From Bispira polyomma (lineage: Eukaryota), in NCBI GenBank assembly GCA_965649765.1, contig OZ287757.1, positions 12,214,001-12,278,000 on the forward strand: a DNA stretch of 64,000 nt, read 5' to 3'. Positions 35,201 through 54,900 of this stretch are shown piece by piece (within the stretch, counting starts at the first letter, position 1; each line of letters starts with the position of its first letter). The notes below the pieces were generated by a model, which was given only the letters and a program-made list of their open reading frames with translations, ran no database searches and was not told the DNA's origin. Position numbers and translations under genes: made by a program.

Positions 35201-36776
35201 CGTTACTAAAGCCTTAAAGAAAGCTGATGGAAGGGTTGTTTTCTGTAAATGTCTGTTAGATCTACATATCTTAACCCTTTCAACCCCGAGGGAAAATTTT
35301 CGACGGGAAAATGAAGGAAATTTTTTCAGGTTATAAGTTATTTATAGTTAGAGTTACTAAAACACACAGCACAGACTACCTCCAGTATTCAATAACGGGT
35401 TAGAATCACTAAAACACACAGCACAGACTACCTCCGGCATTCATTAACGGCCTCATGTATAATTTTTTTAAATAGAAAAGTCTGCTGTACTTGAGGCACT
35501 GAAGGATAATATAATATTTTTTTTTTTTGGGGGGGGGGGGGGGGGGGTGTCGACTGCTATCAGACAACACAAGGGTAGAAATATTTATTTTAGTGTTGGC
35601 AATTAATTATAAAGTTTCGCTAACCAGTTTCCAGACATATGGGCAACAAAATCTGGGATATTGATTTTCCACTTTGGGAGTAAATCCTAAATGTACTGTA
35701 AATATCGTCAAAAGAGAATAAATATATTCAAATGTTTTCAGGCAATATGAAACATATATATTTTTACTGTTTTTACCATTGATAAAAGCAAATACCGCTT
35801 ACCTACACCTATAAATATATATTTGGTAGGGCACAGAAAAGGGGGAAACTGAGTCAGATATCTGAATCCAGGTTATAAAACTTACAAATAGAGCTTCTTG
35901 TATTTAGGTTAACCAGTCTGGTAATTTAGAACTTTTGTCTGAGAAAGAGAAAAACAAACTTAGCAGACAACTTGCTGGTGCTTTATTCTGGGCAGTTCAT
36001 ACTCGTCAAACACACCCCAACTCACACTGACAAACCAAAAACTCCAATGAAGGCAAGTCAAAAATATACAAAACACAAAAAGTATTTGTACTTGTGACCA
36101 TTCATTTAATAGATTTTTCCGTGCTGAATTTAAATATGCAATCAGATCTTTATATATCGCACTTTTCACCAGAGATAGGACGGAAAATGTTCAGAGTTTT
36201 AGTTTAAGTCAAAGCTTGATATTTTGGGAAGAATAAGGGGGTCGTTTGGTGGATAAACCTGCTTCAACAAAACTTGTTTGGTTTGTGGTTTTTTTTCAGT
36301 CTCAAGACAAAACACATGCCATGCTTGTGTGGTAAATGGCATCTAACATTTAAAGAAAGTTTTTTTTGGTTAATTTTTGTTCAAAAGAAATCAAGAGGTA
36401 GAAGGAATTTATTCGTATATTACCTGGATTTTTGTGGAACAACCTGAGCTAACACCCAAGGCCCTCTATACTTGTAAGTACAAGGATTTTCAAACAACTA
36501 AATCTATTTTACCAGCTAGTTGAGACTTAATACTTTTGCTACAAGTAAGCAGAATTGTTTACTTGATCTCCCTTGACTCCAGAATATCCAGATTACAAAT
36601 CATTCCTAACATTTAAGAGACAACCCTGTTGCCCGCTCTTGACATGACTTATATGACAGTAAGCATTAAAACACCCTATTATCACTCACCCGTGCTCCTT
36701 TTTCTCCGATACATCTACAACCACTTGCTGTACAGCCACTGCAACGGCTCGGTAATACTTCGTCCCTGCTACTTTG
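5311..36776 (-). CDS. COL4A2: Type IV (basement membrane) collagen, alpha2/let-2-like chain; partial multi-exon gene (7S domain plus N-terminal helix, 15 exons seen, about 560 aa with one alternative exon)
   Basis: GT-AG exons join in frame to give CxxCxxxxCxCxGEKGxRG, [24 protein letters not shown] and an interrupted Gly-X-Y helix. The alpha2 call rests on remembered similarity to let-2/COL4A2; NC1 is not in the window. Confidence 0.85.
6350..6649 (-). CDS. COL4A2: Collagen IV exon (300 nt, phase 1/1): [21 protein letters not shown]...GVPGQK
   Basis: tttttcag acceptor, gtgagc donor, Gly-X-Y; missed by the ORF track. Confidence 0.93.
7007..7205 (-). CDS. COL4A2: Collagen IV exon (199 nt, phase 0/1): [22 protein letters not shown]...GDEGPP
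   Basis: ttcccccccag acceptor, gtaaca donor, Gly-X-Y. Confidence 0.92.
7250..7479. mobile_element. About 230-bp MITE family with AGAGTAAGGAATCTAAAATTCGCCAC ends (partial copy)
   Basis: Related copies at 14402-14630, 27108-27333, 37836-38070, 51938-52186 and 53195-53435. Confidence 0.7.
7691..7866. mobile_element. Short CAGT-ended MITE family (Tc1/mariner/pogo-like ends)
   Basis: tacagtgaaacccctt...aagaggttcac; related copies near 17035-17212, 17252-17405, 41130-41300 and 59695. Confidence 0.6.
8103..8680. repeat. 39-bp minisatellite, about 15 copies
   Basis: Unit gacatggcccagattcaatgagatcccataacatcaagt; explains the repetitive ORF 8065-8646. Confidence 0.95.
8681..8832. repeat. 10/20/30-bp compound tandem repeat next to an exon donor
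   Basis: cttcacacag-accacatgac-accagatgac blocks. Confidence 0.85.
8845..9000 (-). CDS. COL4A2: Collagen IV exon (156 nt): [19 protein letters not shown]...GLTGPPG
   Basis: actttcccag acceptor, gtgagt donor. Confidence 0.92.
9505..9857 (-). mobile_element. L2/CR1-type LINE 3' end remnant
   Basis: Minus strand encodes [14 protein letters not shown] and frameshifted [14 protein letters not shown], typical of this ORF2 C-terminus; second copy at 41355-41717. Confidence 0.75.
9909..9971 (-). CDS. COL4A2: Collagen IV exon (63 nt): [21 protein letters not shown]
   Basis: attacag acceptor, gtgagc donor, perfect Gly-X-Y. Confidence 0.92.
11282..11335 (-). CDS. COL4A2: Collagen IV exon (54 nt): [18 protein letters not shown]
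   Basis: atctag acceptor, gtaagt donor, perfect Gly-X-Y. Confidence 0.92.
11545..12319. mobile_element. Non-autonomous piggyBac-like element (TTAA|CCCTTTC...GAAAGGG|TTCA)
   Basis: Short TIRs with a TTAA-type target; deleted relatives near 35271-35580, 40894-41130, 46754-46971 and 51799-52335. Confidence 0.6.
14402..14630. mobile_element. About 230-bp MITE copy
   Basis: TIR gtaaggaat...attccttac. Confidence 0.75.
15190..15378 (-). CDS. COL4A2: Collagen IV alternative exon C (189 nt): [63 protein letters not shown]
   Basis: atatcag acceptor, gttggt donor, phase 0/0; homologous to 16713-16886 and 20537-20725. Confidence 0.88.
16713..16886 (-). CDS. COL4A2: Collagen IV alternative exon B (174 nt): [58 protein letters not shown]
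   Basis: tactaacag acceptor (weak pyrimidine tract), gtagag donor, phase 0/0. Confidence 0.82.
17212..17247. repeat. (TA)n microsatellite between two MITE copies
   Basis: Read directly from the sequence. Confidence 0.9.
20537..20725 (-). CDS. COL4A2: Collagen IV alternative exon A (189 nt): [63 protein letters not shown]
   Basis: gtttcttag acceptor, gtgaaa donor, phase 0/0. Confidence 0.88.
23210..23272 (-). CDS. COL4A2: Collagen IV exon (63 nt): [21 protein letters not shown]
   Basis: accctag acceptor, gtaagt donor. Confidence 0.92.
23744..23902. mobile_element. MITE with CAGTAGAACCTCTATTATC TIRs
   Basis: Related copies at 42191-42680 and 46277-46476; half-ends near 6793 and 10770. Confidence 0.7.
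24028..24186 (-). CDS. COL4A2: Collagen IV exon (159 nt): [53 protein letters not shown]
   Basis: ttttccccag acceptor, gtaagt donor. Confidence 0.93.
24758..24866. mobile_element. About 110-bp palindromic MITE (ggccgtattcactaa...ttagtgaattacgggcc)
   Basis: Copies at 38974-39087 and about 53820-53922. Confidence 0.75.
25041..25230. repeat. 50-bp tandem repeat, about 4 copies
   Basis: gtgaagaagaacttgatcggaattaacaaaggtctacatt... Confidence 0.9.
25396..25458 (-). CDS. COL4A2: Collagen IV 7S exon (63 nt): [21 protein letters not shown]
   Basis: Diagnostic 7S GCNGT (Cys plus N-glycosylation sequon); ttttctag acceptor, gtaagt donor. Confidence 0.95.
25474..25703. repeat. 25-bp minisatellite, about 9 copies, 15 nt from an exon acceptor
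   Basis: Unit ttaccattagaaaccagaatcacag. Confidence 0.92.
27928..27972 (-). CDS. COL4A2: Collagen IV 7S exon (45 nt): [15 protein letters not shown]
   Basis: ctttttcag acceptor, gtaagt donor. Confidence 0.93.
28678..28812 (-). CDS. COL4A2: Collagen IV 7S exon (135 nt): [45 protein letters not shown]
   Basis: cttttttcag acceptor, gtaaga donor, perfect Gly-X-Y. Confidence 0.94.
31800..32265. repeat. 68-bp minisatellite, about 7 copies
   Basis: Unit ccacctccctgacctgattctatcaaaaccaaaatacatctc...gtaatatcga. Confidence 0.95.
34336..35213. mobile_element. Non-autonomous DNA transposon, Kolobok-like (TTAA target, GG...CC ends)
   Basis: Perfect 18-bp TIR ggctttagtaacgtaaac / gtttacgttactaaagcc flanked by TTAA on both sides. 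Confidence 0.8.
36690..36776 (-). CDS. COL4A2: Collagen IV 7S Cys-rich start exon (87 nt): [29 protein letters not shown]
   Basis: Four-Cys 7S motif followed by GEKG; ttttatag acceptor, gtgagt donor; phase 0/0. Confidence 0.92.
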
Positions 36777-38474
36777 CTATAAAACGGAAAAAAATGCGAG
36801 AAACAATGTTTATTATTGGTTCAGCAATTGTTGTTAGTTTGCTATAGTGAAAGGAATATAAGGGAGAAACAATGTTTGTTATCATTGGCTTAGAATTTGA
36901 GTTTTCAGCCCCCGCCCCAAAGATAAGCTCCTAATGCCCTGCTGTAAATCATACAAAGTTGGGAAGACGACTAATTAAATAAGTATAGTGAATGTCATTA
37001 TTATGAACACATTGATGTGTACAATATATACACTTTAACTATAAATATATAATTAAAATTTGGAAAGAACAATCTGATGATATAATTCTAATTGAATTTA
37101 CTCTGGAGAGAGAGTTTTGGAAAATTTGTATTTTTAATCATCTTTTAATATAATATTTTACAAAAGCATTAAAAATAGTAAATTGAAGATCTGCTTCTCT
37201 CTCTTATAACGTGGAGATCAAATACAGGAGAGTAAATGGTAAAATCAGTGTAATTACGACTCGACATAACTACAAACATTACTGATAACTATTAAGATAT
37301 ATAATAAGAGGTATAATTATTTAAGTTTTTCTTTAAAACAAACAGAAAAATAAATATATAGCTGTAATTTACACAAAATTAAGCATGCTTGATTATATTT
37401 TCCCAGAGTACATTTTAATACGGTATATGAAAAATGGTTCACACATCATAAACGATTTGTCTACAAGATACATACCCTTAAAACCGTAAGCAGAATTTCC
37501 ACTTAACAGGTCGATTTTTAAAAAGAAAATTCCTCGGTGGGATTAAGACATGTGCATTAACAGACTTCTGCTTAAAGAGGCAAGCGAGCATGTTTGGGAT
37601 GTTGGGGCTGGTTTTCAAAATTCATGGTCTATGTCTAAGTTTGCTGCCTATAAAACGCAGGCCTGAAGTGCATTCACCTTCCCTAAAAATACTTACTACA
37701 TCTATTATAGGAGTTTGTATGACCTCCCACCTTTCAAGGAGATAGATAAATATAGAAACCCAATTTCCCTTGATTGAAGGCCTATGGAAGGAATCGAGGC
37801 CAAGTTTTACATCATTACGTCTACTTGGATATCCCGAGTAAGGAATATACACTTCGCCACTGTATCTTAAAATTCACCACCCTAGAAAATGTTGTGTTTT
37901 TGGTTGAATTGTGGGCAATATTTGCCACAAATTGAGATTTTTGGTGACTATTTTGCCCTTACATACTTAAATTCCAGCTATTTTTCACCACTTACTAATG
38001 CGTTGGCTTAAATATTTAGGGGGGGGGGGGGGTGAATTTTAAAAGAGTGGCAATATTTTAGATTCCTTACCCCATTTTTCGGAGACTGCGCTTTGGAGTA
38101 GCAAATCCAACAATTTTTCAACAGTTATTATCTAAATGTTACTGCATATTAAGTGCGAGCAGAATACATGTATAGTTGGTTGTAATAATATATAAAGCCT
38201 TTTTAAATTTGCAAATTTTCGCTGTGTTCACAGTATATGTGTGGTATAATTTACACAGGTAGTTGTAGGAACTCTGATTAGTGCTGCCAAGCAAATCAAT
38301 CACATACATTTAGTTCTGTGTTCTGATGTCAAAAAGGGCAGTTGTTATACAACTACAATCTTACAGTTTTACAGCCTTATGGAATTACTCATCTAGGTAT
38401 ATGTATATACCTTCTATTTGCCCTGGGGCCCCTGTATTCTGCAAAAAGATCTCAAACTCAACATAGACTCAAAC

Positions 38475-38976
38475 CAGGGCCTTATTCTCGAATGTATACT
38501 CAGCTCAAACTCATGGTCAACTAAAATCTGGATTCTCTAGAACTTCGGATACGTTAAACATATCTAAAATCTGACTGCATATTTGAATTCCGTGTTAAAA
38601 GCTCTATGAATGGTCACAAGTAGAAGTTATTTCCATGTAAATGATTTCCACAAACCCTATATTTGAGTTGAGTATGAGTTTAAGCCGAGTATACGTTCGA
38701 GAATACGGGCCCAGAACTACTCATGTACATATGGAACATTTCGAACGTATACTCAGCTTAAATTCATACTCAACTCAAATACAGGCCATGTGGAAATCAT
38801 TGTACATGGAAATAACCTATACTTGTGACCATTCGTTTTAATAGAGCTTTTAACTGTGAATTCAAATATTAAGTCCGATTTTTTTTATATATTTACCGTA
38901 TCCAGAGTTATGGAAAATCCAGACTTGAGTTGAGTAGGAGTTTGAGCTGAGTATACATTGAAGAATACTAGCCCTG
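38475..38976. mobile_element. Two adjacent, oppositely oriented copies of an about 240-bp MITE
   Basis: tattctcgaatgtatactcagct...gagtatacgttcgagaata ends; 38475-38714 and about 38740-38976 have reverse-complementary interiors. Confidence 0.75.
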
Positions 38977-41354
38977 GGCCTGTATTCACTAACAGACTTA
39001 GCCAAGGCTTATGATTAAATCTAGCAGCAAGTTATACTAGATTTAAGCCTAAGTCTTGGCTAAGTCTGTCTGTGAATACAGGACCTGGACAGTAATATAT
39101 TACATGTGTGTACAACACAGCTATGGAAGTAGTAAACAGATAAACTGACCAATTGTCGTGACCATTATTTACCATTTACTACTACAGATGTTTGGTGGTA
39201 AATACAGTACGAAAATTCTATCATCTGAACCAGAGATTTCGGTTCAGATAATAGAAAAAGGAGTTAAGAGCTATTTTTTGAGGTGGTAACTTCCTGATAA
39301 CTTAAAACTTCAGCAAAGGTTATCAACAGACATGAAGCATTTGCATTTTTTTTTTTTACACCGGGTTTATTCTATCATACAACCAAAGTCTTGTACAAAC
39401 CTTTCATTCTAGCTTCATACAGAATTTGTTATTTTTTTTAAACCTGTGAACGGGAATCCTATATTATAGCTTCTTCTTTTTGTTATGTGTTTTTTTTTCT
39501 TCTAAATTTCTGTTGCTCTTCTAAAAAGGGTGATAAAAACCGTTTAAAGGACATAAGCCCCTCCTAAAAAGGCAATCGTAAAAACCAGACCCCCCCCAAA
39601 TAAAGAAAACATGGTACTTACCGATTGTTCGTATTTTCACTCCAAATGATGATCAAGTACTTACTGATTCTTTTTGTAATAGTTCAAATTTAAAAAAACA
39701 CACAAATAAATCAACATTTTCTGCGTGGCGGTGTATATTGTGTCAATAATAGAATGCATCACATACATAAGAACATGCTTAGTTTTTTTTTTTTTTTTTT
39801 TTAATACTTAATAATGTAAATATTTGTATTTTATATACAGAAATATTACAAAATTGGATAGATATTCAAATGCAATATTACATATTACATCAAACATTGT
39901 TTTTTTTTTTCAAATTCTTCCATTTGAACAAAACATAAACAATATATTCATACACATCCATAAATGTATGAAATGAAACTCGCAACACTTTGGGTTTTTT
40001 ATTTAACATAAAAAAAATTTAACAATACTTTTTCCTTTTTTGATACATTACAAAAATAAAATTTCCATGCATATTTATAGAAAAAACATATTTTTACAAT
40101 TGAATCAGATCTTAGAGCCTTTATAAAAACAATGTATTTAAGATTCAACGAGATAACCAGACTTCTGTGAAAGGATTCACGCCTTAACTATCACTAAATA
40201 TAACTTAATACTATTATTGTCTACTTCTTGCAAAAGATCCCAAAAAATCCATACCAAACTACATACAGACATACTCGTACAATAGGAACAGATTTGCAGT
40301 GCTTTGACTGACACTTTACCTCTTTGTGAAAAATAGATAAATTCAAAAAAATATTTATCATCTATTTAATTTTTAAAAAAACATTAGCGCTTCGAATGAA
40401 AGGTAACACAATAAATAGATCACATTGGATACCAACCCAGATTTCTGACTCATTCTATTGTAGTAAATATATCATTCACATGTGTAAGAGATGCTTTACA
40501 GTTGTTTTTTTTCATAAAATCTCAAAACGCCCGACTTTAAACGACAGGGTGTTTTTATTAGAAATTTAAAGCTTTTTAACTGTTCTATTTTTATTTGTGA
40601 CATACTTTTAATAAAGTAAAGTAAGAGCTTTCTTGTATAGTGACTAATACCTGTCTGCCCAAAGACCTAGTGCAAATACCGTACCTTCTTTATGGAATCA
40701 ATTTTTGTATTTACATTGAAATAATCATCCCGCAAAGAATAGAAGTATAAAGAATGGCAGACGAAGTGTATTTTTTTTATACTTTTTGTACAATAGTACA
40801 TATACAAACATTATTTGTTATGATACTTTACCGTAAAGCTCAAAACACATGCTCAACAAAATGAAAACATTACAAAAACGACATAGAACGTTCATCCCCT
40901 TTTAAATCGAGCCTCAAGAGAAAACTATCGCCGGAAACTGAAGGCCATTTCAGGGTGAAAGGTTACAGATAGCTAGAGTCACTAAAACGTGGACTACTTC
41001 CGACATTTAATGATGGGTCTCGCATATAATGTTTTAAACAAAGAAGTCTGCTGTACCAATTTTCTATTGCAAGGAACTGAGGGTGACTAATGTGATATTT
41101 TTAGGGTGTCGACTGCTTGCCAACCTCGGGGGTTTATATCGACCCTCAAGGGACCAATTTAAAATACTTCTACTTAGCAGGATTTCCACTAAACAGGGTA
41201 GAATTTTAAAATGACAGAATTTTGTGGGACTACAGAGTTTTTAGTCACAGCAAAAAAAATTGATTTGATCAGAGTTCAACTTAAATGGGGGTTCAATTGT
41301 AAATGTGCCTTTATTACTGAACAGTATATTATCATACTTTTGTGTGAAGACAAA

Positions 41355-41717
41355 ATCTAACCTAACTTTAAAAGTGCTTAACTCTGTGCTAGCAGATTCT
41401 AAGGCGCATGAGACAGAAAATCATTTAGAAAATTTCATATATCCATTTGACGTACAGGGGTCGTGACTATGGAGACACCGGAAAAAGGTAAGGAGGCTAA
41501 GGTGGAAAAGCCTTGCTGAATAGGTAGGTTTTGAGCTTTTTCCTGAAACAGGCAAGTGAGGAGGCAGTGCGAATATCATGAGGCAGATCATTCCACAGAT
41601 TAGGAAAATCATGAGAAAACATTGTTGAAATGTCTTTTTGGCTTGTGAACTGAAAGGTAGTCGTGTTTTAAGGTAGGGACACTTGAGAAAGCATTTTCTG
41701 GCCTACTACACCTTGTA
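41355..41717 (-). mobile_element. L2/CR1-type LINE 3' end remnant
   Basis: Colinear with 9505-9857. Confidence 0.75.
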
Positions 41718-41968
41718 TTTGAATTGGGATATTTAATGTCCACTCTAGTACCTGTTTAGGTTATACTGGGACGGATAGTTAGAAACGCTGGAGGAAACAC
41801 TGCATACAGTTGATCAAGGTTCTGCACTGAAACCAGCGGCCCACAGTGAAGAACTACCACCTTTCCCACATAGGCATCGATGTGAGTCGAACTCACGCCG
41901 CCCAGAGGTGAGAGACCAGTGATTGTGAAGTGCAATGCTTGCTAACCACTAGGCCACCGCGGCCCCCA
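41718..41968 (-). mobile_element. Full-length tRNA-derived SINE with 14-bp TSD
   Basis: A box tggcctagtgg, B box gagttcgac; TSD tactacaccttgta at 41704-41717 and 41969-41982. Confidence 0.9.
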
Positions 41969-42717
41969 TACTACACCTTGTAATGCCATGTATAGGTATA
42001 TGTACACAAAAACCTGGGATGCAGCACTTGTTCTGGGATTTACAGTAAAAAAAAACAAAACACAAATTAAAGACTGAGCACAAAGTTTGAGCTTTTACAG
42101 AAATGAGAATATCAAAATACAGAATAATTAAGACATTGAAGAGAATGCCAGAAAAGACTAATCTTCTATTACATATTTAAATGATGTCTATACAGTAGAT
42201 CCTCTATCATCCGAACACCTTAGGTTACTAGAAGGTTCATAGAAAGAGTAGAAATATGCAAATGTGTTAGAAGCGGAAACGTGTGTTAAGAGAAAACTGA
42301 ATAAAATCACTTATATTGGAAGTTCATTCATTCATTATCAAAACTTTTTTTTTTTTTTTGGGGGGGGGGGGGGGTTGTTTCTTGTTTGAAAATTATTTAT
42401 CTTTTTCAAGGCGTGGGAGTAAATCAGGAGAAGTTTGTATAATAGAAGGTAGTGCTGTACGTTTTAAAAGAGAAACCTATATCTCGACATACATACAGTA
42501 GAATCGCTATTATACAAACATCTTACAGTACGTAAACAAAGCAAGATTTTGTTAAAAAATTGGAAGGTTTTTTTTACCTCCTGTATTAAAAAAAAAAAAA
42601 ACATCAGAAAAACCTCGATTGGGAGAGTGAAAATTGAATATTTGGATAATAGAATTGCTGATAATAGAGGATCTACTGTACAATATATAGAGATATATAC
42701 ATGTTTATACATAAATA

Positions 42718-42723
42718 TTTATT
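42718..42723 (-). promoter_or_regulatory. Candidate polyadenylation signal AATAAA
   Basis: About 36 nt after the TAA of exon 42760-42987; the hexamer is common in AT-rich DNA. Confidence 0.4.
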
Positions 42724-42759
42724 CTGCTGCATTTTATCTTCGTGTGTACACAGATATTA

Positions 42760-42987
42760 TTATAGATAATTCCACATATCTCCAGCCATGCAGGGTGGAT
42801 TCCCCAAACCAACCGATTCTTCGATTTCTCCTCCCTTGTTGGACGGTTGCTCCGGTTGTTCGACCACTGGCTCCTCAGGTACTGGCACTGGGACGTCGGT
42901 TCTGCCGCCATCCGGTTGTGATGGGATCGGTTCATAGTCATAATTGTATTCCTCCACCGCTCCAACGGGCGCAGTCTCCACGGAACC
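42760..42987 (-). CDS. Array last exon: GSVETAPVGAVEEYNYDYEPIPSQPDGG...NKGGEIEES(VGLGNPPCMAGDMWNYL*)
   Basis: tttttcccacatgcag acceptor; TAA at 42760-42762; possible internal donor TCG|GTTGGT at 42814/42813. Confidence 0.8.
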   Translation of the reverse strand, partial: GSVETAPVGAVEEYNYDYEPIPSQPDGGRTDVPVPVPEEPVVEQPEQPSNKGGEIEESVGLGNPPCMAGDMWNYL

Positions 42988-45900
42988 CTGCATGTGGGAA
43001 AAATGGTGTACACTGAACAGATGTGTAGTAACCAAACAGAGATAACATATCGTATTGAGAGAAGTTATTGATGTTGAATATGTAGGTTACAAGAAATCGA
43101 TCAGAATACATTTACATTTAAAGCCCCTAAACGATTGGGATGGCTTGAATTTTTTTTTAATTTAGCGTATTTGTAATGATGGCAGGCAGTGTGTGAAATT
43201 CACTGTGGCCCAGCGCCACCGCTTAATTGAAAAAGCCACTTCTTTTCAAATTCCGGTGGCCCGTTTGGCCACCATATTTCCGGGGCTTTGACTTTTTTTA
43301 CTACACACGCTACAGTAAACTTGTGATACCAGATTGTTCCATTTGCTTCGGCACGCATGCGCAGATGAAATTTATTGTTGAATAAAAGGAAGATTTTATA
43401 TATTCTTAAGTAGTCATATATGTGATCTTTATATATTCTAATTAAACGCATATTTTACTAACTTCATCTATTATTGCCCAGTGCTCTCACTGCTAACCAG
43501 TGTTTCACAGTTAAATCAACCCCTCTTGCCCACTCATTCGAAACAAATAAGAGCGGCTGGTAAATTTTCAGCCCATTTTTTTGAAGTAACACAATATATC
43601 TTTTATTATGTATTAAAAAAATTTGTTTTAAGTTGTATTCTGAAATAAAATTTATAGCTTAATTTTTTTAAGTATTGGGCAACCTGATTGTAATCCAAGC
43701 CACCACACTTTTTCCGCGAAGTTCACATACTAATGACAGGGTACTCATACACCCCCCTCCCCACACACCCTCTCCAAGGATCTGTACACACCCTCACCTT
43801 CACCACTCTGTATCTAGAATACTCATACATACCCCTCCTTCCCCATGGATCTTTATCCCCCTTCACCTTCTCCACTCTGTATCCAGAGAGTACTCATACA
43901 TCCCCCTCCCCTTCCCCATAGATCTGTATCCCCCCTCACCTTCACCACTCCATATCCAGTGTACGTATACACTCCAGGTCCCTCCGCTGTCGCCTCTCCA
44001 GACGTCACCTCTCCAGATTCCACCTCTCCATCAAACTCTCCCCCTGAGAAGACTGGCTCCCTGTTTATGTCTGTCACTGTGGTGGATCCAGACTCCCCAG
44101 ATCCGTACACTTCAGTAGAGCCAGAGGCATCAAATCCACGGTCTCCAGAAATGGAGAATCCTGAGCCTGATCCTGAGACATCAAATCCACTGCCGCCACT
44201 CTGGGAAAGTTAAACGATGATATAGCTATGAATATAGACGATAGTCTTATTTTGACAAACAAGTTCTTATTTGTTGTTAAAATGGACTTCTACAATGAAG
44301 AAAACCTTTCAAAATACAACAAAATTAAATGTGCTGAAATATATCAATTTGAATACAATATACTCACTGGGTAGACAAAGTATGTGTAATCCCCTGATCC
44401 AGACTCCCATCCACTGCCGGAATCCTGGAGAGAGAAACAAACAACACATTACTTGACATGTTTATTAGATTCAATAAGAGCTTCTCCATAAAATGTTTAT
44501 TGTTTGACAGTAATTGTACTTGGGAGTATCATAACTCACATATTAACTTGCCTGCCAGTATTGATCAATGTGATGAAATGTGTTCCAATCAAATCAAATA
44601 TTTAGAAAAGTTTGGGAAAGTATTAAAGATCTCAGAATACTTACCACCCCTTCATAGGGTCCACCAATAACAACCTCTTCTCCTTCATCCCCTCCTTCAG
44701 GAGTTACCTGGAATGTTAACAGACACAGCATATATAGTATTCCATTGTATTTTGTCTTTTTAGCGTGCCGTCTTGATGCAAGGCATCGACTGAATTGCAG
44801 AATTTCCCGAGAGAGACATTATTTTGAATTATAAAAGTAAGTAAGGAAAATATTTGCTGTTATATATTTAAAGTGAACTGTCTACCTGTCTACCCTCTAC
44901 TAAATATACACCTAATTAACATATTCATTACCTAATTAACATAAATTATATTATTGTTTATTCATATTTGATATCACTACATCCAAGATGGCGTCCCTCC
45001 AGGGAAATTCTGCAATCCTGCCGAGGCATCTTCCAAAGTGCAACAACATAATTAATTGACCAATCGAGAAGTCCAACGAAACATAGCCAAAGTCATAAGG
45101 ACGGATGTGAAGTGTACAGGGAAGCAACAACAGAGTCAGTTAACCAATAGAGACGTTCAAAAACATAGCCAAGATCGTAAGGAAGAATCTAAATGTGGCT
45201 GTGTGTGGGAAGGGGACCAAGTGGAGTAAGCAAGTTTGAAGAGATGGGTTTCAAGTATGTTTCTGTACCTAGATAGTGTTTCAGGTGATGCTAACTCAAA
45301 AGGGAGACCATTTCATAACATAGGGGCAGCAGTAGAGAAAGCTCTCCATCCAGCCTTCTTGGTGGGTCTCACAGCCTTCTTGGTGGGTCTTACAGCCTTC
45401 TTGGTGGGTCTTAAAGCCTGCTTGGTTGGTCTTACAGAAAGTAAAGTCTTAGCTTCAAATTCATTGGTCTCTCACCAATGTGGGTTCGAATTTGGTTTGA
45501 TCCTTCATATGGGAAAGTTTGTCAGGTACTTTTCAGAGTTCGATGGTATACACAGTGGCTTTAGCACTGGTTTCTTCCACCAATGAATCTGGCCGTCGTG
45601 ATATGACCTAAGGCGGTTATGAAAAGCAACGTAAAACCCAACTAAATTCCAATTAAAATTTTTAGAAGCATTACATATTTAATTCTTGGTCCAAAACAAT
45701 AAGTTTATTAAAATTTATATTTAAACTTTTTTTCAAAACCTTGAAAAGTAACAATCATTCTAAACTATAAATCTGTCTGTTTGATTTACAACTGTGGTAA
45801 CAAAAGAAATCAAACATTTGCAAAAAAGAAATGAATATTTGGATTAGAGAAGTTCATATGATGGAGTTTTGTAATCTACTCACCACTTCTGGGTAGGTCA

Positions 45901-48900
45901 CCACTCCTTTCTCACTAATGATCACATCAGCCTGTAAAATAAACAAATGAAGAACTCAGAGCTACAGGAGAAACCGTGTTAGGTCGAATCTAGAGCTATA
46001 ACAAGTTGTTCTACTAAAGAAAAATAATAAAATTTTTGTGGTGTCCATTGCTTGCCATCAGACATGGCTTCTGGGGAGTAACAAATGCTACTAGTCGACA
46101 ACCTAAGGGTCAAGGGGTCGAATGGGTGGGCGATATTTTCTCAACAGAATTCTACTTAAAAGGGGTTCAAGTGTACACTAATTGACAATACAGATGTCTA
46201 TTTGTTTTGTGTACATAAATATGCATTAACCAGAATTATAATCTGACTGGTTAGTGTAAATGAACTAATTACTAAGGTAGAACCTGTATTATCCGACCCT
46301 CTATTATCCAACCTTCTATTATCCGAATAATTGATTATATCGACCCATTTGGACTAGCCCAAACTTATTTATTGCTATGTTTTTATACTAAAATGCCACT
46401 TCTATTTTACAGACCTTTTATTATCCAAACAAATTGTCACTCTCCCAAGATGTCCATATAAGAGAGGTTCTACTGTACATATAAACAGAGGCCGGAACTA
46501 CTTTTGTGACTCACCCGACCATCCCCTCCTTCTGTAAATTCTGGGGCCGTTTCACCCTTCTCTCCAGTTACTACATTCACCTGAAAATATAGTGCCGTCA
46601 CTTGTTGAACTTTTGTGGTACAATTTTTTTGAATATTTTAAACAAATTAACCAAACAAACCCCTATACTCAACCTATAATAAATCCCCCATTTTTACACG
46701 GATATAATTTGTTAATAGACAGACCGACATAAAACTCATATAAACTTCATATTTTAACCCTTTCAATTCCAAAAGAAAACTATTGCCCGGAAACTGAATG
46801 GAAATATTTCGGTAATAGATTACAGATAGCTGGAGTCACTGAAAGACACCCCACAAGACTATACTTCCAACAATTACAAATTAACTCACGTATAATTTTT
46901 TTTAAACAGGGAATTCTACAATGAAAAATATAATAAAATGAGTGCTAGTCGACAACCTAAGGGTTGAAAGGATTCAAATCCACCGCTTTGCAAACTAGCT
47001 TCACAAAACTGCACCTTCCAGTAATATATAAACAATTACATAATAATAACACATAAACCAATTATCAGTCTCTTAAAGGTTTTGGGAAAAAAACGGGATA
47101 TTTAATCCATTTTTTCAGCAGTTATGGTACTATATAACGGCACTATATAAGATGTTTTGTTCACTTACTGTTTCATCACCTCCTTCAGTGTATTCCGGAG
47201 CCGTTTCTCCCTTTTCATTTGAAGGCACAAACACCTGAAGATAAGAGTCAAACAGACGATATAACCTTTCACCTACTAACTGTAGTATTACCACGATAAA
47301 TATCTAGTTTCATACTCTCTTGTCAGCAATTTGTTAGTCCTAGAACTTATATCTATTACTTTATTTTTCTTCAATTCCTCTCTATAAGAAATTGTTAGTA
47401 CAGGCGACGTCCATGTTTAAAAAATTATATGCGAGACTGTTATTGAATGCCATAAGTAGTCTGAATTCATCTGTAACTTATTGCTAAAAATATTTTGTTT
47501 GTCAATCCATGAAATACTTACTTCTCCCCACACATTATATTGTTGTAAATCGATGAATTACTTAAGTGTCACACCAATTAGTTACTATCCTTACTAAAAA
47601 ATAATTTTCTTTGTCAATCCATGAAATACTTACTTCTCCCCCTACAATTCCTGTGTACTGGGGACCTACTGGGCCTTTCTCCTCAACATTCAGCTGCAAC
47701 AAAAAAAAAAACAACAACACAAAACTATTATACTGTACAATTGCTATGTGCAATTTAATATCTTACTAAATAAAGAAAACATTCAAAGGTTATATATTTA
47801 ATTCTCTCTTAAAATTTTATGGTATTACAGCATAAAACTTCTATTATCTGAACTTTCTGTTATCCCAGTACACGATTGTCATGATCTTTTGCTTATCACT
47901 ATTTCCCAAAATTCATATTTTCAAATTGTCTTTCCTAATGTTTTAGTAAACCTTCTATTATCCAAACAGAATCAAAGCTAGGTGTGTTGTTGAGATAACC
48001 AAGGTTCTCCTGTCACTGATGCGTTCAATAGCATCATAAATGCCTGTATTGTTACCCGCTCTGTCAACCTTCTAGTATCCCTTACATCGGTGTATTGGCT
48101 CCCCAAACTAATTAAATACCTCTTGTGGGTTTTTTTTATCAAGTCTGAGGTTGTTTTCATTCTGAAAAGGGTGCCGCTATCACTGTGTGAATTACTAGCC
48201 CTGACATTTTGGCTGTATCTTTGCCCATGTATAATTAACCTCATGTGACATTGTAAAATCCTTTATTATCACTCACTCTATTTATAAAACCTCCTATTAT
48301 CACTCACTCTGTGTATAAAACCTTTTATTATCACTCACTCTATGTCCAAAAACCTTCTATATTATCACTCACCCCTGCATTGCCCCCCTGGGAATATCCT
48401 TGTGCTTGGGCAGATTTCTCTTGTGATTGACGATACTACAACACATAAAAACAGAATACGCTACAAAAATCATAGATTAATTCACACTTTCAATAATCTA
48501 CCATCACATGAAACACAAACAATACAATCAAATTTGTGTTTAAACGCAAAACAAAGTAAAAACACTTCTGTTATCCGAATTAATCATGTCTAAATATTCA
48601 GTTTAATACACTCTTTGCCCCTTTAACGATTTTCCTATTGTTTATTTACTGAAGTACTTATTCTATTTTGTTAATTGACAGTTTATATCCACACAACATT
48701 GGTTCTACTAGATTAACTAATATTCATGTAATTTCCTATTGTGATTAAATTTTTTTGAATAAGAATAACTATAAATTCTTATATATCCTAACATATTGGG
48801 TGTACATTGATTCAACTTGTAATAAAAAGGATAGAATTATGTAAATTATATTGCATAAACAGGACATCTGCCAAGTTATCGTTGTTTCAATAATAAAGGT

Positions 48901-51900
48901 GTCATATTTTATATTGTGTACTTACCAGTTCAGCTTCCCGTGCAGACGTGTACTGTTGCTGAAACAAGAAATATATCACATTAATATGAGAATAGTGGCA
49001 AGGAAAAATCTCCAAAGAACTACAATAATTGTTTATACAAAATCCCCAGGCGTAAATAATACCATTTCTTAGACTAACAGACAGGCCCATTAGCAGCCAG
49101 GTACCCATGCATACACCGGGGTAGAGAGAGGGACAACTGTTCTGTGTGAAGTACCTTGTCCAAGAGTGTACAATCTCTAGGCCTGCAGGCGAGGATCGAA
49201 CCTGGGACCCTCTAGGATTCAAACTTAAACACTCTAGCCTTGGAGACTAAGTGGTTTTAACAAAAGCCAAAGAAGTGGGCGTTTATTTGAGAGGTTTTTT
49301 TTTTATATACATATCTACACTGCTGTGTGAAAGCCACCTAGCAATATCAATAAACAAACACTTAGAAATCATCTCTTTCTGAAAGTGCTTTTCACTTGTA
49401 ACCTGTACATTACTGTGACTTTATGTTTTATATACATCTTTTCTTTGATGTTTAACTCCCGATTTTGTAAAACTCCCAAACTTTCAAGAAAAAACCTCCT
49501 GCATCCGACATCAAAAGCAAGACATTATTTTTTAGGTCTCTGTGTACCGTATTTTCTATAATAAAGGTCCCCTTCTCTAATTATAGCCCCCCCCCCCTCC
49601 CCCCCCCACCATCTCTAAACATATGTTTAGGTCCATTAAATGCTAATATTTCTGCAGGTACTACATTAAAATACCACTGGAAATCACTACATCACTCTTC
49701 CAGGCAATGTGGAACATGTTTTAAATAGTGACTTGTATCCGACATAAGTGTACGATAATGTAGGTCAGCCTGTAAATTGTATTGATCTATGGCCGAGAAT
49801 CAAACGATTTTGTGGATGGTTTCTATGATTTTCTTAACAATATGTTATACTACCAGATATCAATATCATTTTCTTTAACTTTTTCATGACTAGGAGAAAA
49901 GCACCGGCAGGAACTGATGGAAATTTTTCGGCAACAGATAATAGCAATAGTCATTAAAACAAACACCACAGACTACTTTGGGGGTGGGGGGGACGGGAAA
50001 AATATTGCCATTAACAAAAATCTTCTTACTAAAAAAATTTAAAAAAAATTATAGCCTAAATTATAGAAAACCCTGACGCCCCAGGGGTGTTCATTACACA
50101 AAGTACAGTATTCAGTATGTACTGACCCTGGCCTTCTCTTCAGACTGCCTCCTCTCCAGCTCATAGCGCTCACGTTCTCTCTGGAAAGTTTTAGAGGAAA
50201 AGAAACGTTTTAAATAAACACCCAAGACTTGACAACAATTTTTCAATTTGTAAATTGCATTATGGTCTTTTTGTTAACAGATTTTATTCCTTTATATTTA
50301 CTCTAATAATAGTTAAAAATAAATTATTTAATGCAAACAAATATCAAGTCCCCAATGTCTGATTTCATAATTCAGACGTTTGCGTAATAGAGATTTGATT
50401 GTATTTACTGTTTTTCTTCTGAGAATTATTGTCCATGCTACTATTACACCTGACTCTAAATGTATCATTTGTAAACACCGTAAATGAACTCAAGTTACAT
50501 TTTTTCTCCTTATCAGTAAGATATTAATCTTTAATAACACATATATACATATATGAGCTACCATTGACACTAACATCATGAATGGCAAAAATATACAGGC
50601 ACTTTTTACTGTTTGGAAAAAAACATTGAAAAGAACAAAACTAAATATATAGAAAGACAAAAAAAAATGTCAAGGGATTTTGAAAGTGATCCAATCATTC
50701 CAGAAAGCAAAAAAATGTTATTCAGCCAGTTTAGTATATATCTCACAGCTGTCACTCAGTAGAGTGCATACTTTTCCTAACACGATAGATATTACCTAAA
50801 CATGAAATAATCTTAAAAACATTCTAGAATCCACATTTCCATCCAGACCTGCCTCATAACGTTTGATGGATTCACTTCTTGAATGGAGCTTCCCATCATC
50901 CCTATGTTTTTGGGGGTTGTTGACTAATGAAATACATTCTATCAGTAGTTTTGGAAAGATGACAACCAAACAAACAAACCAACGAACAGGAAGACAGAAA
51001 ACATAATTTCCTCATTTGGTGGCGGTTTTATAAATATACACCACACTACAATTCCTTACCAATCCATGCAAATTTCTTCGTGCATATTCCATCATTCGTC
51101 TCTGCAAGGCGCGAATACAGTAAAAATACAAAGCAAGGTTGTGTATAATAATACAGACATAAGGTGTGGGAAAGGCAAGCTGGAAGCCAAAAAAAAAAAA
51201 AATAAATATTTTTTTAAATATGAAAGGTCCTGTCTCTCTTGAAAAGAAATGCAAATAAATTGATAAGAATTATACATCAAAGATTACCAATTTTTCAAAA
51301 CATCTGATATTTATTGATACAAATATTATATACATACTGAAAAGCCATACAATACATTACGTTTACAATACACATAGTTTATTATCAAATACGATAAGAA
51401 CAAAAAAGCAAAATTAAAAATAGTGCAAGATAATCAATTAAATGTGTAAGTTAGTTAGGTTTTATTTAAAAGCAAAAATAGTTCAGAAAAACACAAAGTT
51501 GAAACATCTGTTTATTCAAGGGTAAATCATCATTCCGTATTTTATGTATTTTTAAAATTTCCAGAAAAATATAATATATTTCGGGGAGAAAAATTAGAAA
51601 TAGTTTTAAATGTTGCAGATGCATGATGACGGATTTCTACGGCAGGCGACACTTACCCTGTATTCATAGTCATCCCGTCCTGGCTGTATCTATAGTAATA
51701 ACGAATAAACAAAAACAAAGGATGAGTAATTCAATACATTCAATGTTACATTATTCAATATTGACCAAAATTTAGGAAACCTAAAAATATCCCACCATTC
51801 CCCTTTTGACCCAAAGAGAAAACTATCACCAGGAACTGAAAGAAATGTTTGGGGATAATAGATTAAAAATAGCTGGTGTAACTAAAACAAACATTCAAGA

Positions 51901-54900
51901 GCCTCGCATATAATTATTTATATAAGGAAATCTGCTGTAGAGTAACAAATCTAAAATTGGCCACTGTATCTGAAATTGGCCACCTACAAAATGTTCTGTT
52001 TTTTGTGGAATTGTGGGTAATATTTGCTAAAGTCGAGATTTTTGTGACTATTTTGCCTTACTTACCCAAATTCCATTTATATTTTCGCCAGTTTTTAATT
52101 TATTCAGCCTAAATTTTAGGGGTGGCCAATTTCAGATACAGTGGCCAATTTCAGATACAATGGCCAATTTTAAATTCCTTACTCTACTAATGAGTCCCTT
52201 TTTCAAGGAACTGAAAGGAAAATAAAATACTATTTTTGGGGTGTGTCAGCTGCTCGTCAATGACAGATATAGCCTGTGGGAGTAAGAAATGCCATCAGCT
52301 GCTAGTGTTGACAAATCAGAGGTCGAAAAAGTTAAAATTGCACCCTATTTATTTTGTTTTTTTGGGGCTAGTGGTTTCTCTTAAGAAGTAATTCAGCTTG
52401 AGTTACCTTCAAGTCCAACTTCATAAGTTAAAAATACCCACCAACACATTTATATGACCAAAATTGTTTGACAAAACACACTACCACTTGCTGACATTTC
52501 ATACTATATATAAATACCTACCCTATCATCACGTCCCTGTGCATATTCAGGATTAGGACCTTTTTCATCCGATGCTCTGTACCTCTGGAAAGAGAAAACA
52601 ACACAGATATAAACATTTATACACACAAACCTTGTATAGTGTCTAAACTTCTGTTATCTAAATGGTTGGAATTGATGAGACACAACAGAGTGTGTTTGGA
52701 TAACAGGGATTCTGTTATCTGTGTCTATGTGTTGATATCATGTATATATTTTTGTGGTGGTTTTTTTTTTTGTATTTATACTAACAAAACAAACACCAGA
52801 TTGACTGACAAACACTAAAAAATATCAACAAAAGAATATTGACACAAAGGAATTATTTCTAGCTAAAAATAAAATATTTATTTTTTTTCCGTGACTTTAG
52901 TTAAAAAAAAAACTTAACACAAAAGGAAAAACCATTCTTATGGGATGTAAAATTAAGAACATATTGATATTTTTAAAAGAAAAAAAAAAAGATTCTTTTT
53001 ACAAAAGACTTCGGTGTTAAATTTCTATTACTGCACGTCAAATTTCTCATAGAAGAATTGGATATCGGGATGTGGTGGTGAGGTTTAGATGGGGACTTCA
53101 GACAATATACAGAGTGCAATATATAATATTTCTTAATCTATTTTTATTTTCAAGTTTAATAAAAAAGTCTATCAGACAAGTTCTTTTATACTTAAGAGTA
53201 AAGAATATAAAATTTGCCACTTTATCTATAATTTGTCACCACCTACAAAAATGTTGTGTTTTTGGGTGGAATTGAGGGTAATATTTGCTAAAATTGAGAT
53301 ATTTGGGACTTTTTTGTCTTATTTACCTAAATTCCAAGTTACTTTTTCCACCAGTTTTTTTTTTTTATTGATTTAGCTTAAATTTTGGGGGTGGTGAATT
53401 TTAGATGCAGTGGCGAATTTTAGATTCCTTACTCTGTGCATTGTCTGTTATAACCATCTTACGAGATGCACGACTCTCACCTTTCAAAATAGAAGTTTTT
53501 TAAAATAGAAAGATAAGAAAAGACAATTTGGGGTAGAAGGGATTGCTAAAGAATATAGGAACACCAAGCAAAAAAGGCTATTATAATATAACTAGTGTAC
53601 AAGCTTGTCTAAATTAAAGACACATGATACGCTCACAATATTGTTACGTCATCACCTTTTTGGTTCTTACTTTTTAGTGTTGTTTTTTCCCCCCAGACCA
53701 CTAAACAGACCTGGTTCAACTCTCAATGTTGATTTTATGCCAGACAAAACAGACATCCACCAACACACAAACACGGACTGACACGCCGATATTCATGAAA
53801 GCTCAGGGTCTAGAATTGACTGATGGACTTAGCCAAGTTTAAGGCTTACCGTAAATGTAGTATACCTTTGTGCTAGATTTAAGCCTAAAACCTAGCTATG
53901 TCTGTTAGTGAATACAGGCCCAGATAAAAATGGTGCTGCTCAGGTTTTCAATTAACAATTGTTTCTTTTAAGATGTAGTTACAATTTAAGGCAACTAATC
54001 TCCATAGTTTACACATAGCAGGAGAGTGTTTGTTTTTTTCGGTTGATTAAAGTTCCCCAACGCACAATACAGATATTACTAGTTTTCCTATTGGTTATTC
54101 TTGTTTTACAATGCATTTGTTGATTATAGGGACACTCTTGTTGTAATAAATTTATTTTTTACAACTGACAATGTTTTTTACAAGTGGTGAATTGTCCAGA
54201 CAAATTGGGGTGACTATTTAATGTGTTAGGGTGTAGTAGTTACTCACCCTGACATCCTCCCTGCCCCGAGCATACTGTCTGTCAGGTCCTTTCTCCTGGG
54301 ACTGATGATAACGCTACAAACATATAGACAAGGCTGAATTTTTTTTACTTTGGATATTAAACGTCCACTCTAGTACATGTTATATTGGGACGGGTAGTTT
54401 GAAACACTGGAGGAAACACTGCATACAGTTGATCAATGTTCTGCACTAAAACCAGCGGTCCACAGTAAGGAACTACCACCTTTCCCACATAGGCATCGAC
54501 GGAATTCGAACTCACGCCGCCCAGAGGTGAGAGACCAGTGATTGTGAAGCACAATGCTTGCTAACCACTAGGCCACCGCGGCCTCTAGACAAGGCTGATA
54601 ATTGGTTCATCTTCTACATACTACTACTGGTCAGCCAGTGAATTTCACCACCTAAAATAAAATCTTTAAATTTGACGATGGGTACCCTACTTTTTCCGGT
54701 TTGTGGGCATTCCAACCGTATTTTTAAGGTTTCTGTGGTTTAGCAACAACAATTTTTAAGATAGACTCCTAGGGCAGGTGGAGTTGATGGTTTAAAATAT
54801 ACTGAAATAAATATAATGAAAAATGTGGCCATTTCTATGCTAAAAGTTCATGTTATGGCGGAAAACGATTTTAAAACAGTTATTATAGTTTTGTATGAAG

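What the first reader, a model, noticed from the sequence alone, without database searches (positions are those of the whole stretch)
42718..42987. Dual-use exon: stop plus polyA, or in-frame splice towards the collagen
Seen: read through, the exon ends ...EIEESVGLGNPPCMAGDMWNYL* with AATAAA about 36 nt later. It also contains TCG|GTTGGT at 42814/42813, exactly in phase 0, and GTTGGT is the donor I infer for collagen exon C. The tail supplies the only Cys in the whole array. Known: composite terminal/internal exons switch protein form, as in secreted versus membrane IgM. Inference: one locus makes a free, possibly disulfide-linked repeat/proteoglycan protein and a collagen IV chain carrying it.
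Basis: partly seen in the sequence, partly recalled or inferred. Interest (0 to 1): 0.78.

Follow-up and report, generated by a model that had tools for sequence, protein, structure and literature searches.

The report
Last exon beside worm collagen IV
This stretch is most likely the ordinary last exon of a new, repeat-rich secreted-protein transcript that sits just upstream of a fan worm's collagen IV gene; the proposed hidden splice site inside it is no better than chance, and no RNA data exist to show whether the repeat protein is ever joined to the collagen.

Summary
All sequence facts hold on the minus strand. The exon is 42987-42760: acceptor cag, 75 codons, TAA. AATAAA lies 36 nt later, TCG|GTTGGT at 42814/42813 is in phase 0, and the tail holds the only Cys of a 615-aa head.

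The "dual use" is not supported beyond chance:
- Nine of the exon's twelve GTs are in phase 0, because they are Val codons.
- The GTTGGT site scores 2.6 bits on a donor matrix from this locus. All 27 trusted donors used in that matrix (28 listed, one mis-called) score at least 5.6, and 11% of all GTs on the strand score as high.
- Every head exon is phase 0-0, so skipping this exon (donor after 43940 to acceptor 36776) is equally in frame and uses strong sites.

A head-collagen link remains plausible:
- The 6-kb gap holds no credible signal-peptide exon for the collagen 7S exon.
- The whole head lies inside a head-to-head collagen IV gene pair, whose partner has a textbook signal exon.

No RNA run exists for this species, and the head has no relatives in 1.84 billion proteins.

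Verdict: a real terminal exon, either of a separate gene or of a skipped alternative last exon. The composite-exon reading has a probability of about 0.1.

The parts
42760..42987 (-). The exon in question: 228 nt, 75 codons plus TAA, read from 42987 down to 42760 and starting in phase 0. It is acidic and Pro-rich, with the motif EEYNYDYEP, and its tail holds the only Cys of the head.
   Evidence: GC is 57% in the body and 47% in the tail, against 27-35% in the flanks. The exon is unique in the genome. Pfam gave no match.
42988..43010 (-). Pyrimidine tract and acceptor cag of the exon. This acceptor is weak.
   Evidence: It scores 6.2 bits on an acceptor matrix built from 25 acceptors of this locus (range 5.1-21.9).
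42808..42813 (-). GTTGGT, the proposed internal donor after TCG (42814). It reads as codons Val-Gly.
   Evidence: It scores 2.6 bits, while 27 trusted donors score 5.6-14.3. Of all GTs on the strand, 10.8% score as high.
42760..42762 (-). Stop codon TAA.
42718..42723 (-). AATAAA polyadenylation-type hexamer, 36 nt after the stop. It is followed by a CA and a T/GT-rich stretch.
   Evidence: The chance of AATAAA within 50 nt is 6%. No RNA 3' ends are available.
43940..44200 (-). The preceding Ser-Gly-rich head exon (87 codons, phase 0-0), with the strong donor AAG|GTGAGG after 43940.
   Evidence: The donor scores 10.4 bits and the acceptor 11.4.
43940..60353 (-). Head array: 23 trusted phase 0-0 exons, mostly 66 nt and of the EKGPDP type, with strong splice sites and no Cys.
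   Evidence: The array occurs only at this locus in the genome and has no relatives in 1.84 billion proteins.
36777..42759 (-). The 6-kb gap between the stop and the collagen 7S exon. About 2.4 kb of it is high-copy repeats (37800-38000, 38400-39200, 40800-42000). It holds no credible signal-peptide exon.
   Evidence: Scans; repeat depth; local repeats.
36690..36776 (-). Collagen IV 7S exon (29 codons, Cys cluster CSGC...C.C then GEKGAR). The acceptor at 36776 is in phase 0, a TAG lies directly upstream, and the donor is CGG|GTGAGT.
   Evidence: The acceptor scores 8.8 bits. The NC1 exons of the same gene lie at C10:12195073-12197833.

Best explanation
Positions 42987-42760 form a plain 3'-terminal coding exon of the Cys-free, telopeptide-like and Ser-Gly-rich 'head' transcript. 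The upstream donor after 43940 splices to the weak acceptor at 42987. Translation then runs 75 codons to TAA, and the RNA is cleaved some 15-25 nt after AATAAA (42723-42718). The GT at 42813 is a valine codon, not a working donor.

This leaves two sub-cases of roughly similar weight:
(a) The head is a separate gene that ends here, and collagen IV has an undetected first exon in the gap (about 0.4).
(b) Head and collagen IV form one transcription unit. The donor after 43940 then chooses between the near, weak acceptor 42987 (free head protein) and the far acceptor 36776 (collagen IV carrying the head, junction GYGVVK|QSSRDEV). That would be a skipped-terminal-exon switch of the calcitonin/CGRP kind (about 0.3).

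Shown here: the sequence features, splice-site scores, phases, and the absence of a signal exon in the gap. Inferred: actual use of any site.
For: Evidence that this is a real exon:
- GC jumps to 57% exactly at the acceptor and falls to 27% just after the stop.
- The composition and the acidic Tyr motifs match neighbouring head exons.

Evidence that it is terminal:
- No in-phase GT in the exon reaches the range of 27 trusted donors. The best are 3.7 and 2.6 bits, against a minimum of 5.6.
- It has a stop codon, with AATAAA 36 nt later. The chance of that hexamer within 50 nt is 6%.

Evidence that the skip route is open:
- All 24 trusted head exons and the 7S acceptor are phase 0.
- The donor after 43940 scores 10.4 bits. 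Acceptor 42987 scores 6.2 and acceptor 36776 scores 8.8.

Evidence for a link to the collagen:
- The same scan that picks out the partner gene's textbook signal exon (L005:9292-9369:+, donor 11.5 bits) finds nothing comparable on the minus strand in the gap.
- The head lies between the two genes of a head-to-head collagen IV pair and has the orientation of the downstream gene.
- Such pairs are conserved across animals (PMC12141075).
Against: - There is no RNA of any kind. The only public runs that hold this DNA are genomic.
- No orthologue is available for testing conservation of the tail, the stop or the GT.
- Weak internal donors are typical of regulated composite exons, so a low score does not exclude use.
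- The tail's GC (47%) is only about the 88th percentile of the first 51 nt of 34 introns here. A 17-codon read-through is also ordinary. The tail is therefore not proven to be coding.
- The head's own start and signal exon were not found either. My exon-1 scan is therefore not fully sensitive.
Confidence: 0.68

Rival explanations
1. The same exon is either read through to the stop and polyadenylated, or spliced at TCG|GTTGGT (42814/42813) in frame to the 7S exon at 36776. This would give a free head protein and a collagen IV chain carrying it, in the manner of IgM secreted/membrane forms or sFLT1.
For: - The phase is right, and the layout matches a composite exon: donor, then a stop after 17 codons, then AATAAA about 90 nt after the donor.
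- GTTGGT is also the inferred donor of collagen exon C.
- Composite exons usually have weak donors (general knowledge).
- No signal exon for the collagen lies in the gap.
Against: - The donor scores 2.6 bits, below all 27 trusted donors and equalled by 10.8% of all GTs.
- Nine of the twelve GTs in the exon are in phase 0, and 42957 scores higher.
- Exon C's donor is itself unverified and belongs to a putative alternative exon.
- The strong donor after 43940 gives an in-frame route without this site.
- There is no RNA.
Confidence: 0.1
2. An internal exon only. Positions 42987-42814 (or 42987-42958) form a constitutive head exon with an unusually weak donor. The stop and AATAAA are then ordinary intron sequence met by reading through, and no free head protein is made.
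For: - Read-through of other head donors stays open for up to 16-73 codons.
- The tail's GC is within the intron range.
- AATAAA is common in this AT-rich DNA, at 1.3 per kb.
Against: - All 27 trusted donors of the locus score at least 5.6 bits, and a constitutive exon at 2.6-3.7 bits would be an outlier.
- GC stays high up to the stop and drops right after it.
Confidence: 0.08
3. Not a used exon. The open frame is a decaying or cryptic exon that is always skipped, and the head is always spliced from 43940 to the 7S exon.
For: - The acceptor is weak, at 6.2 bits.
- About one open frame of 108 codons is expected by chance in six frames of 64 kb at this composition (my estimate).
Against: - The GC step is sharp and exon-like.
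- The composition is head-like, the start is in phase 0 at a proper acceptor, and the stop is followed by AATAAA.
Confidence: 0.1

Closest known systems
Skipped terminal exon switches (calcitonin/CGRP type alternative last exons; classes as defined in the intronic-polyadenylation literature listed, e.g. PMC5928244, which I listed but did not read)
   Same: An exon with an acceptor, a stop and a polyA signal but no usable donor sits between an upstream donor and a downstream acceptor. That donor and acceptor are in frame with each other.
   Different: Neither isoform has been observed here. The two products would be a free repeat protein and a collagen IV chain with an N-terminal head, and I know of no precedent for that.
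Composite terminal exons (IgM secreted/membrane switch; soluble FLT1 from intron read-through)
   Same: The layout is a candidate donor followed by a short unique tail, a stop and AATAAA.
   Different: The candidate donor is statistically indistinguishable from a random in-frame Val codon and is not needed for an in-frame product.
Canonical head-to-head collagen IV gene pair (COL4A1|COL4A2; PMC12141075)
   Same: - There are two collagen IV genes on opposite strands with 5' ends facing.
- Both have a short Cys-rich 7S exon in phase 0, followed by a 45-codon and then a 15-codon Gly-X-Y exon.
- The partner gene has a standard signal exon.
   Different: - About 46 kb separate the partner's first exon from this gene's 7S exon.
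- That space holds an 18-kb array of about 25 non-collagen exons in the same orientation.
- No signal exon for this gene was found next to the partner's.

Membership tests
Composite (dual-use) terminal exon | A working 5' splice site inside the exon, upstream of the stop | tested here: inconclusive
   The GT at 42813 is in phase 0 but scores only 2.6 bits. Trusted donors score at least 5.6, and 10.8% of all GTs score as high. No RNA is available to show use.
Composite (dual-use) terminal exon | A polyadenylation signal downstream of that splice site, within the would-be intron | tested here: met
   AATAAA lies at 42723-42718. This holds at sequence level only, and the chance of the hexamer within 50 nt is 6%.
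Composite (dual-use) terminal exon | Both mRNA forms exist | not testable with these tools
   There are no RNA runs for this organism. The three runs that hold the DNA are genomic contigs.
Skipped terminal exon (alternative last exon) | The exon has an acceptor, a stop and a polyA signal but lacks a competent donor | tested here: met
   The acceptor scores 6.2 bits.
Skipped terminal exon (alternative last exon) | The upstream donor can join the next downstream exon in frame | tested here: met
   The donor after 43940 is in phase 0 and scores 10.4 bits. The acceptor at 36776 is in phase 0 and scores 8.8 bits.
Skipped terminal exon (alternative last exon) | Both mRNA forms exist | not testable with these tools
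   No RNA data exist.
Independent collagen IV gene downstream | Its own first exon with start codon and signal peptide between 42760 and 36777, ending in phase 0 | tested here: not met
   Only two ATG-to-phase-0-donor candidates reach 4 bits or more, and neither looks like a signal peptide. Weaker ones have unusable donors. As a positive control, the partner gene's signal exon came second by hydrophobicity (3.2), behind a TG-repeat artefact, and had by far the strongest donor (11.5 bits) in the same kind of scan. A two-exon 5' end was not excluded.
Collagen IV | 7S Cys cluster, Gly-X-Y exons and a C4 (NC1) domain on the same strand | tested here: met
   The 7S exon is at 36776-36690. Gly-X-Y exons run from 28812 to 5311. 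PF01413 matches lie at C10:12195073-12197833 on the minus strand.

The most novel reading that the evidence does not exclude
One transcription unit inside a head-to-head collagen IV pair has grown a lineage-specific, Cys-free head of about 25 exons and 540 aa in what was intron 1. The head consists of telopeptide-like EKGPDP repeats plus Ser-Gly and acidic-Tyr blocks. An alternative last exon then decides between two products. One is a free head protein ending in a lone-Cys tail. The other is a collagen IV chain that carries the head in front of its 7S domain. The route could be exon skipping or, less likely, the internal GTTGGT.
Probability: 0.35. Interest if true: 0.7.

Novelty: new member of a known kind. 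Interest (0 to 1): 0.3.

Why it matters
As it stands, this is an ordinary gene end in an undescribed, species-restricted gene, and the proposed splice trick is not needed to explain anything.

It would matter if RNA showed the head on collagen IV. No collagen IV chain that I know of has a large domain in front of the 7S cross-linking region. A switch between a free and a collagen-borne form of a cross-link-motif and proteoglycan-like module would then be a new way to tune a basement membrane.

The practical value of this check is threefold. It shows which junctions to look for: 43940-42987, 43940-36776 and 42814-36776. It shows that the phase argument carries no weight. And it places the locus inside a collagen IV gene pair.

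Tried and rejected
- RNA evidence. The look-up of sequencing runs listed only three runs, all holding intron and exon alike. Read laying showed single-copy genomic contigs with no splice joints. Splicing and polyadenylation therefore could not be tested.
- Relatives. The word search with the 75-aa exon was blank. HMMER with the 42-aa double head exon against 1.84 billion proteins gave no hits. Pfam was blank for four exon peptides. The own-genome search found no paralogue of the exon or of the head repeat.
- Joined models.
- Signal-exon hunts. Scans of the gap, of the region upstream of the array, and of the region next to the partner's first exon gave nothing convincing.
  - The ATG frame at 60932-60810 looks signal-like. 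I rejected it as evidence because the same artefact (a pyrimidine tract read in frame) appears upstream of several head exons, and its ATG sits in a TATA-like run.
  - The frame at 89834-89778 (extended coordinates) lies inside the partner's intron 2 and is no better than false positives on the other strand.
- CpG observed/expected as a promoter mark did not flag even the partner's promoter, so I dropped it.
- The 7S exons of the second collagen IV pair could not be located by pattern, so that pair gave no control for spacing.
- Tail GC and read-through length as proof of coding were not significant against other introns.

Full report
**What is there.** The window is G000:C10:12214001-12278000, and everything relevant lies on the minus strand.
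- The exon starts at 42987 behind a pyrimidine tract and cag.
- It is open for 75 codons, ends ...EIEESVGLGNPPCMAGDMWNYL, and stops at TAA 42762-42760.
- AATAAA follows at 42723-42718.
- TCG ends at 42814 and GTTGGT begins at 42813. Positions 42987-42814 make 174 nt, so the GT is in phase 0.
- GC rises to 57% at the acceptor. It is 47% in the 51-nt tail and falls to 27% right after the stop.

**Context upstream.** The exon is preceded by an array of small exons.
- I trust 23 of these exons between 60353 and 43940. Most are 66 nt and encode variants of LNFRPSDEKGPDPRFATGRNDR.
- They are followed by acidic and Ser-Gly exons (44707-44645, 44424-44368, 44200-43940).
- All are phase 0-0 with strong sites: acceptors of 6-21 bits and donors mostly GTAAGT or GTGAGT.
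- Together with the exon in question they give 615 aa with a single Cys, in the tail.
- The repeat and the exon occur nowhere else in the 1.04-Gb genome.
- They have no Pfam match and no word-search hit.
- The 42-aa double repeat has no relative in 1.84 billion representative proteins.

**Context downstream.**
- Positions 36776-36690 form a collagen IV 7S exon ([11 protein letters not shown], then the Cys cluster, then GEKGAR). An in-frame TAG lies directly upstream, so it needs an upstream exon ending in phase 0.
- Gly-X-Y exons follow down to the window's start.
- The C4/NC1 exons of the same gene lie at C10:12195073-12197833.

**Test of the internal donor.** I built a donor matrix from 27 trusted donors of this locus (28 were listed, one of them mis-called).
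- Trusted donors score 5.6-14.3 bits, whereas TCG|GTTGGT scores 2.6.
- Of all 4019 GTs on the strand, 10.8% do as well.
- Nine of the exon's twelve GTs are in phase 0, simply because they are Val codons, and one of them (42957) scores 3.7.
- The hexamer it shares with collagen exon C (AAG|GTTGGT at 15190) is real. That donor, however, is only inferred, for a putative alternative exon. GTTGGT occurs 12 times on this strand.

Because all head exons are phase 0-0, the donor after 43940 (AAG|GTGAGG, 10.4 bits) can join acceptor 36776 (8.8 bits) in frame, skipping the exon. Its own acceptor is weak, at 6.2 bits. The phase argument therefore carries no weight, and the internal donor is not needed.

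**Is the tail coding?** This is only weakly supported.
- Its GC is about the 88th percentile of the first 51 nt of 34 introns of the locus.
- A read-through of 17 open codons is ordinary.
- AATAAA within 50 nt has a 6% chance.

Against a purely internal exon stands the lack of any donor within the range seen in every other exon here.

**Is the head linked to the collagen?** A genome-wide scan for C4 domains gave new context. It shows a partner collagen IV gene on the plus strand, head-to-head with this one.
- Its first exon is a textbook signal peptide with a GTAAGT donor (L005:9292-9369:+).
- Its second exon is a 20-codon 7S Cys exon (L006:4632-4691:+).
- Its third and fourth exons mirror this gene's 45- and 15-codon exons.

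The head array thus lies between the partner's first exon and this gene's 7S exon, in this gene's orientation. Head-to-head pairs are the conserved state in animals (PMC12141075).

The same scans that find the partner's signal exon find no credible one on the minus strand in the 6-kb gap. About 2.4 kb of that gap is high-copy repeat.

These points favour one transcription unit. Two things weigh against it. The head's own start was not found either, so my scan is not fully sensitive. And a stop followed by a polyA signal is the usual mark of a gene end.

**Expression.** No RNA run holds this sequence. The three runs that hold it are genomic: single-copy contigs run across introns, and the only joints lie in repeats. 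Splicing and polyadenylation remain untested.

**Weights.**

| Reading | Probability |
|---|---|
| Terminal exon of a separate head gene | about 0.4 |
| Terminal exon that is skipped to make head-collagen IV | about 0.3 |
| Internal exon only | about 0.08 |
| Unused exon | about 0.1 |

**Verdict.** The thing is real and ordinary in kind (a last exon). The claimed dual use is unsupported but not excluded. The locus as a whole deserves RNA work. Earlier notes of this scan on the same window treat the head as part of collagen IV. My checks neither confirm nor refute that.

Noticed in passing
L005:9292-9369 (+), L006:4632-4691 (+), L008:1051-1185 (+); NC1 at G000:C10:12388556-12391450: A second collagen IV gene lies head-to-head with the window's gene. 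It has a clear signal-peptide exon, a 20-codon 7S Cys exon 5.3 kb further on, and then 45- and 15-codon Gly-X-Y exons that mirror the window's gene. Its first exon is about 46 kb from the window gene's 7S exon.
   Followed up: partly
G000:C10:35993275-36001827 (-) and 36093342-36100250 (+); G000:C5:64173232-64178142 (+): C4-domain matches mark a second head-to-head collagen IV-like pair about 107 kb across, plus a fifth C4-domain gene on another contig. I could not find the 7S exons of that pair by pattern.
   Followed up: partly
window 43779-43959: A tandem repeat (period about 70-73, 2.6 copies, 83% matches) starts inside the Ser-Gly exon's 3' end. It repeats the exon end together with its GTGAAG|GTGAGG donor about three times into the intron.
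   Followed up: partly
window 37800-38000, 38400-39200, 40800-42000; also 54357-54554: These are very high-copy interspersed repeats, with word depth up to millions in genomic runs. The element at 41756-41935 recurs in a head intron at 54357-54554.
   Followed up: no
window 42630-42654: A short repeated piece just downstream of the putative cleavage site. Genomic contigs break there, and it matches four other places in the 280 kb examined.
   Followed up: no
window 60810-60932 and 61588-61620: The 5' end of the head is unresolved. The two most upstream proposed exons have weak acceptors (5.1-5.5 bits). An ATG-initiated frame at 60932 with a hydrophobic stretch and a strong GTAAGT donor could be a first exon, or it could be just a pyrimidine tract read in frame.
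   Followed up: partly
window 15190, 16716, 20537: The three homologous collagen exons A, B and C all end ...K|GT with weak donors (GTGAAA, GTAGAG, GTTGGT; exons A and C were scored at 2.8 and 4.7 bits, exon B was not scored). This contrasts with the GTAAGT/GTGAGT donors of the neighbouring collagen exons and would fit alternative use.
   Followed up: partly
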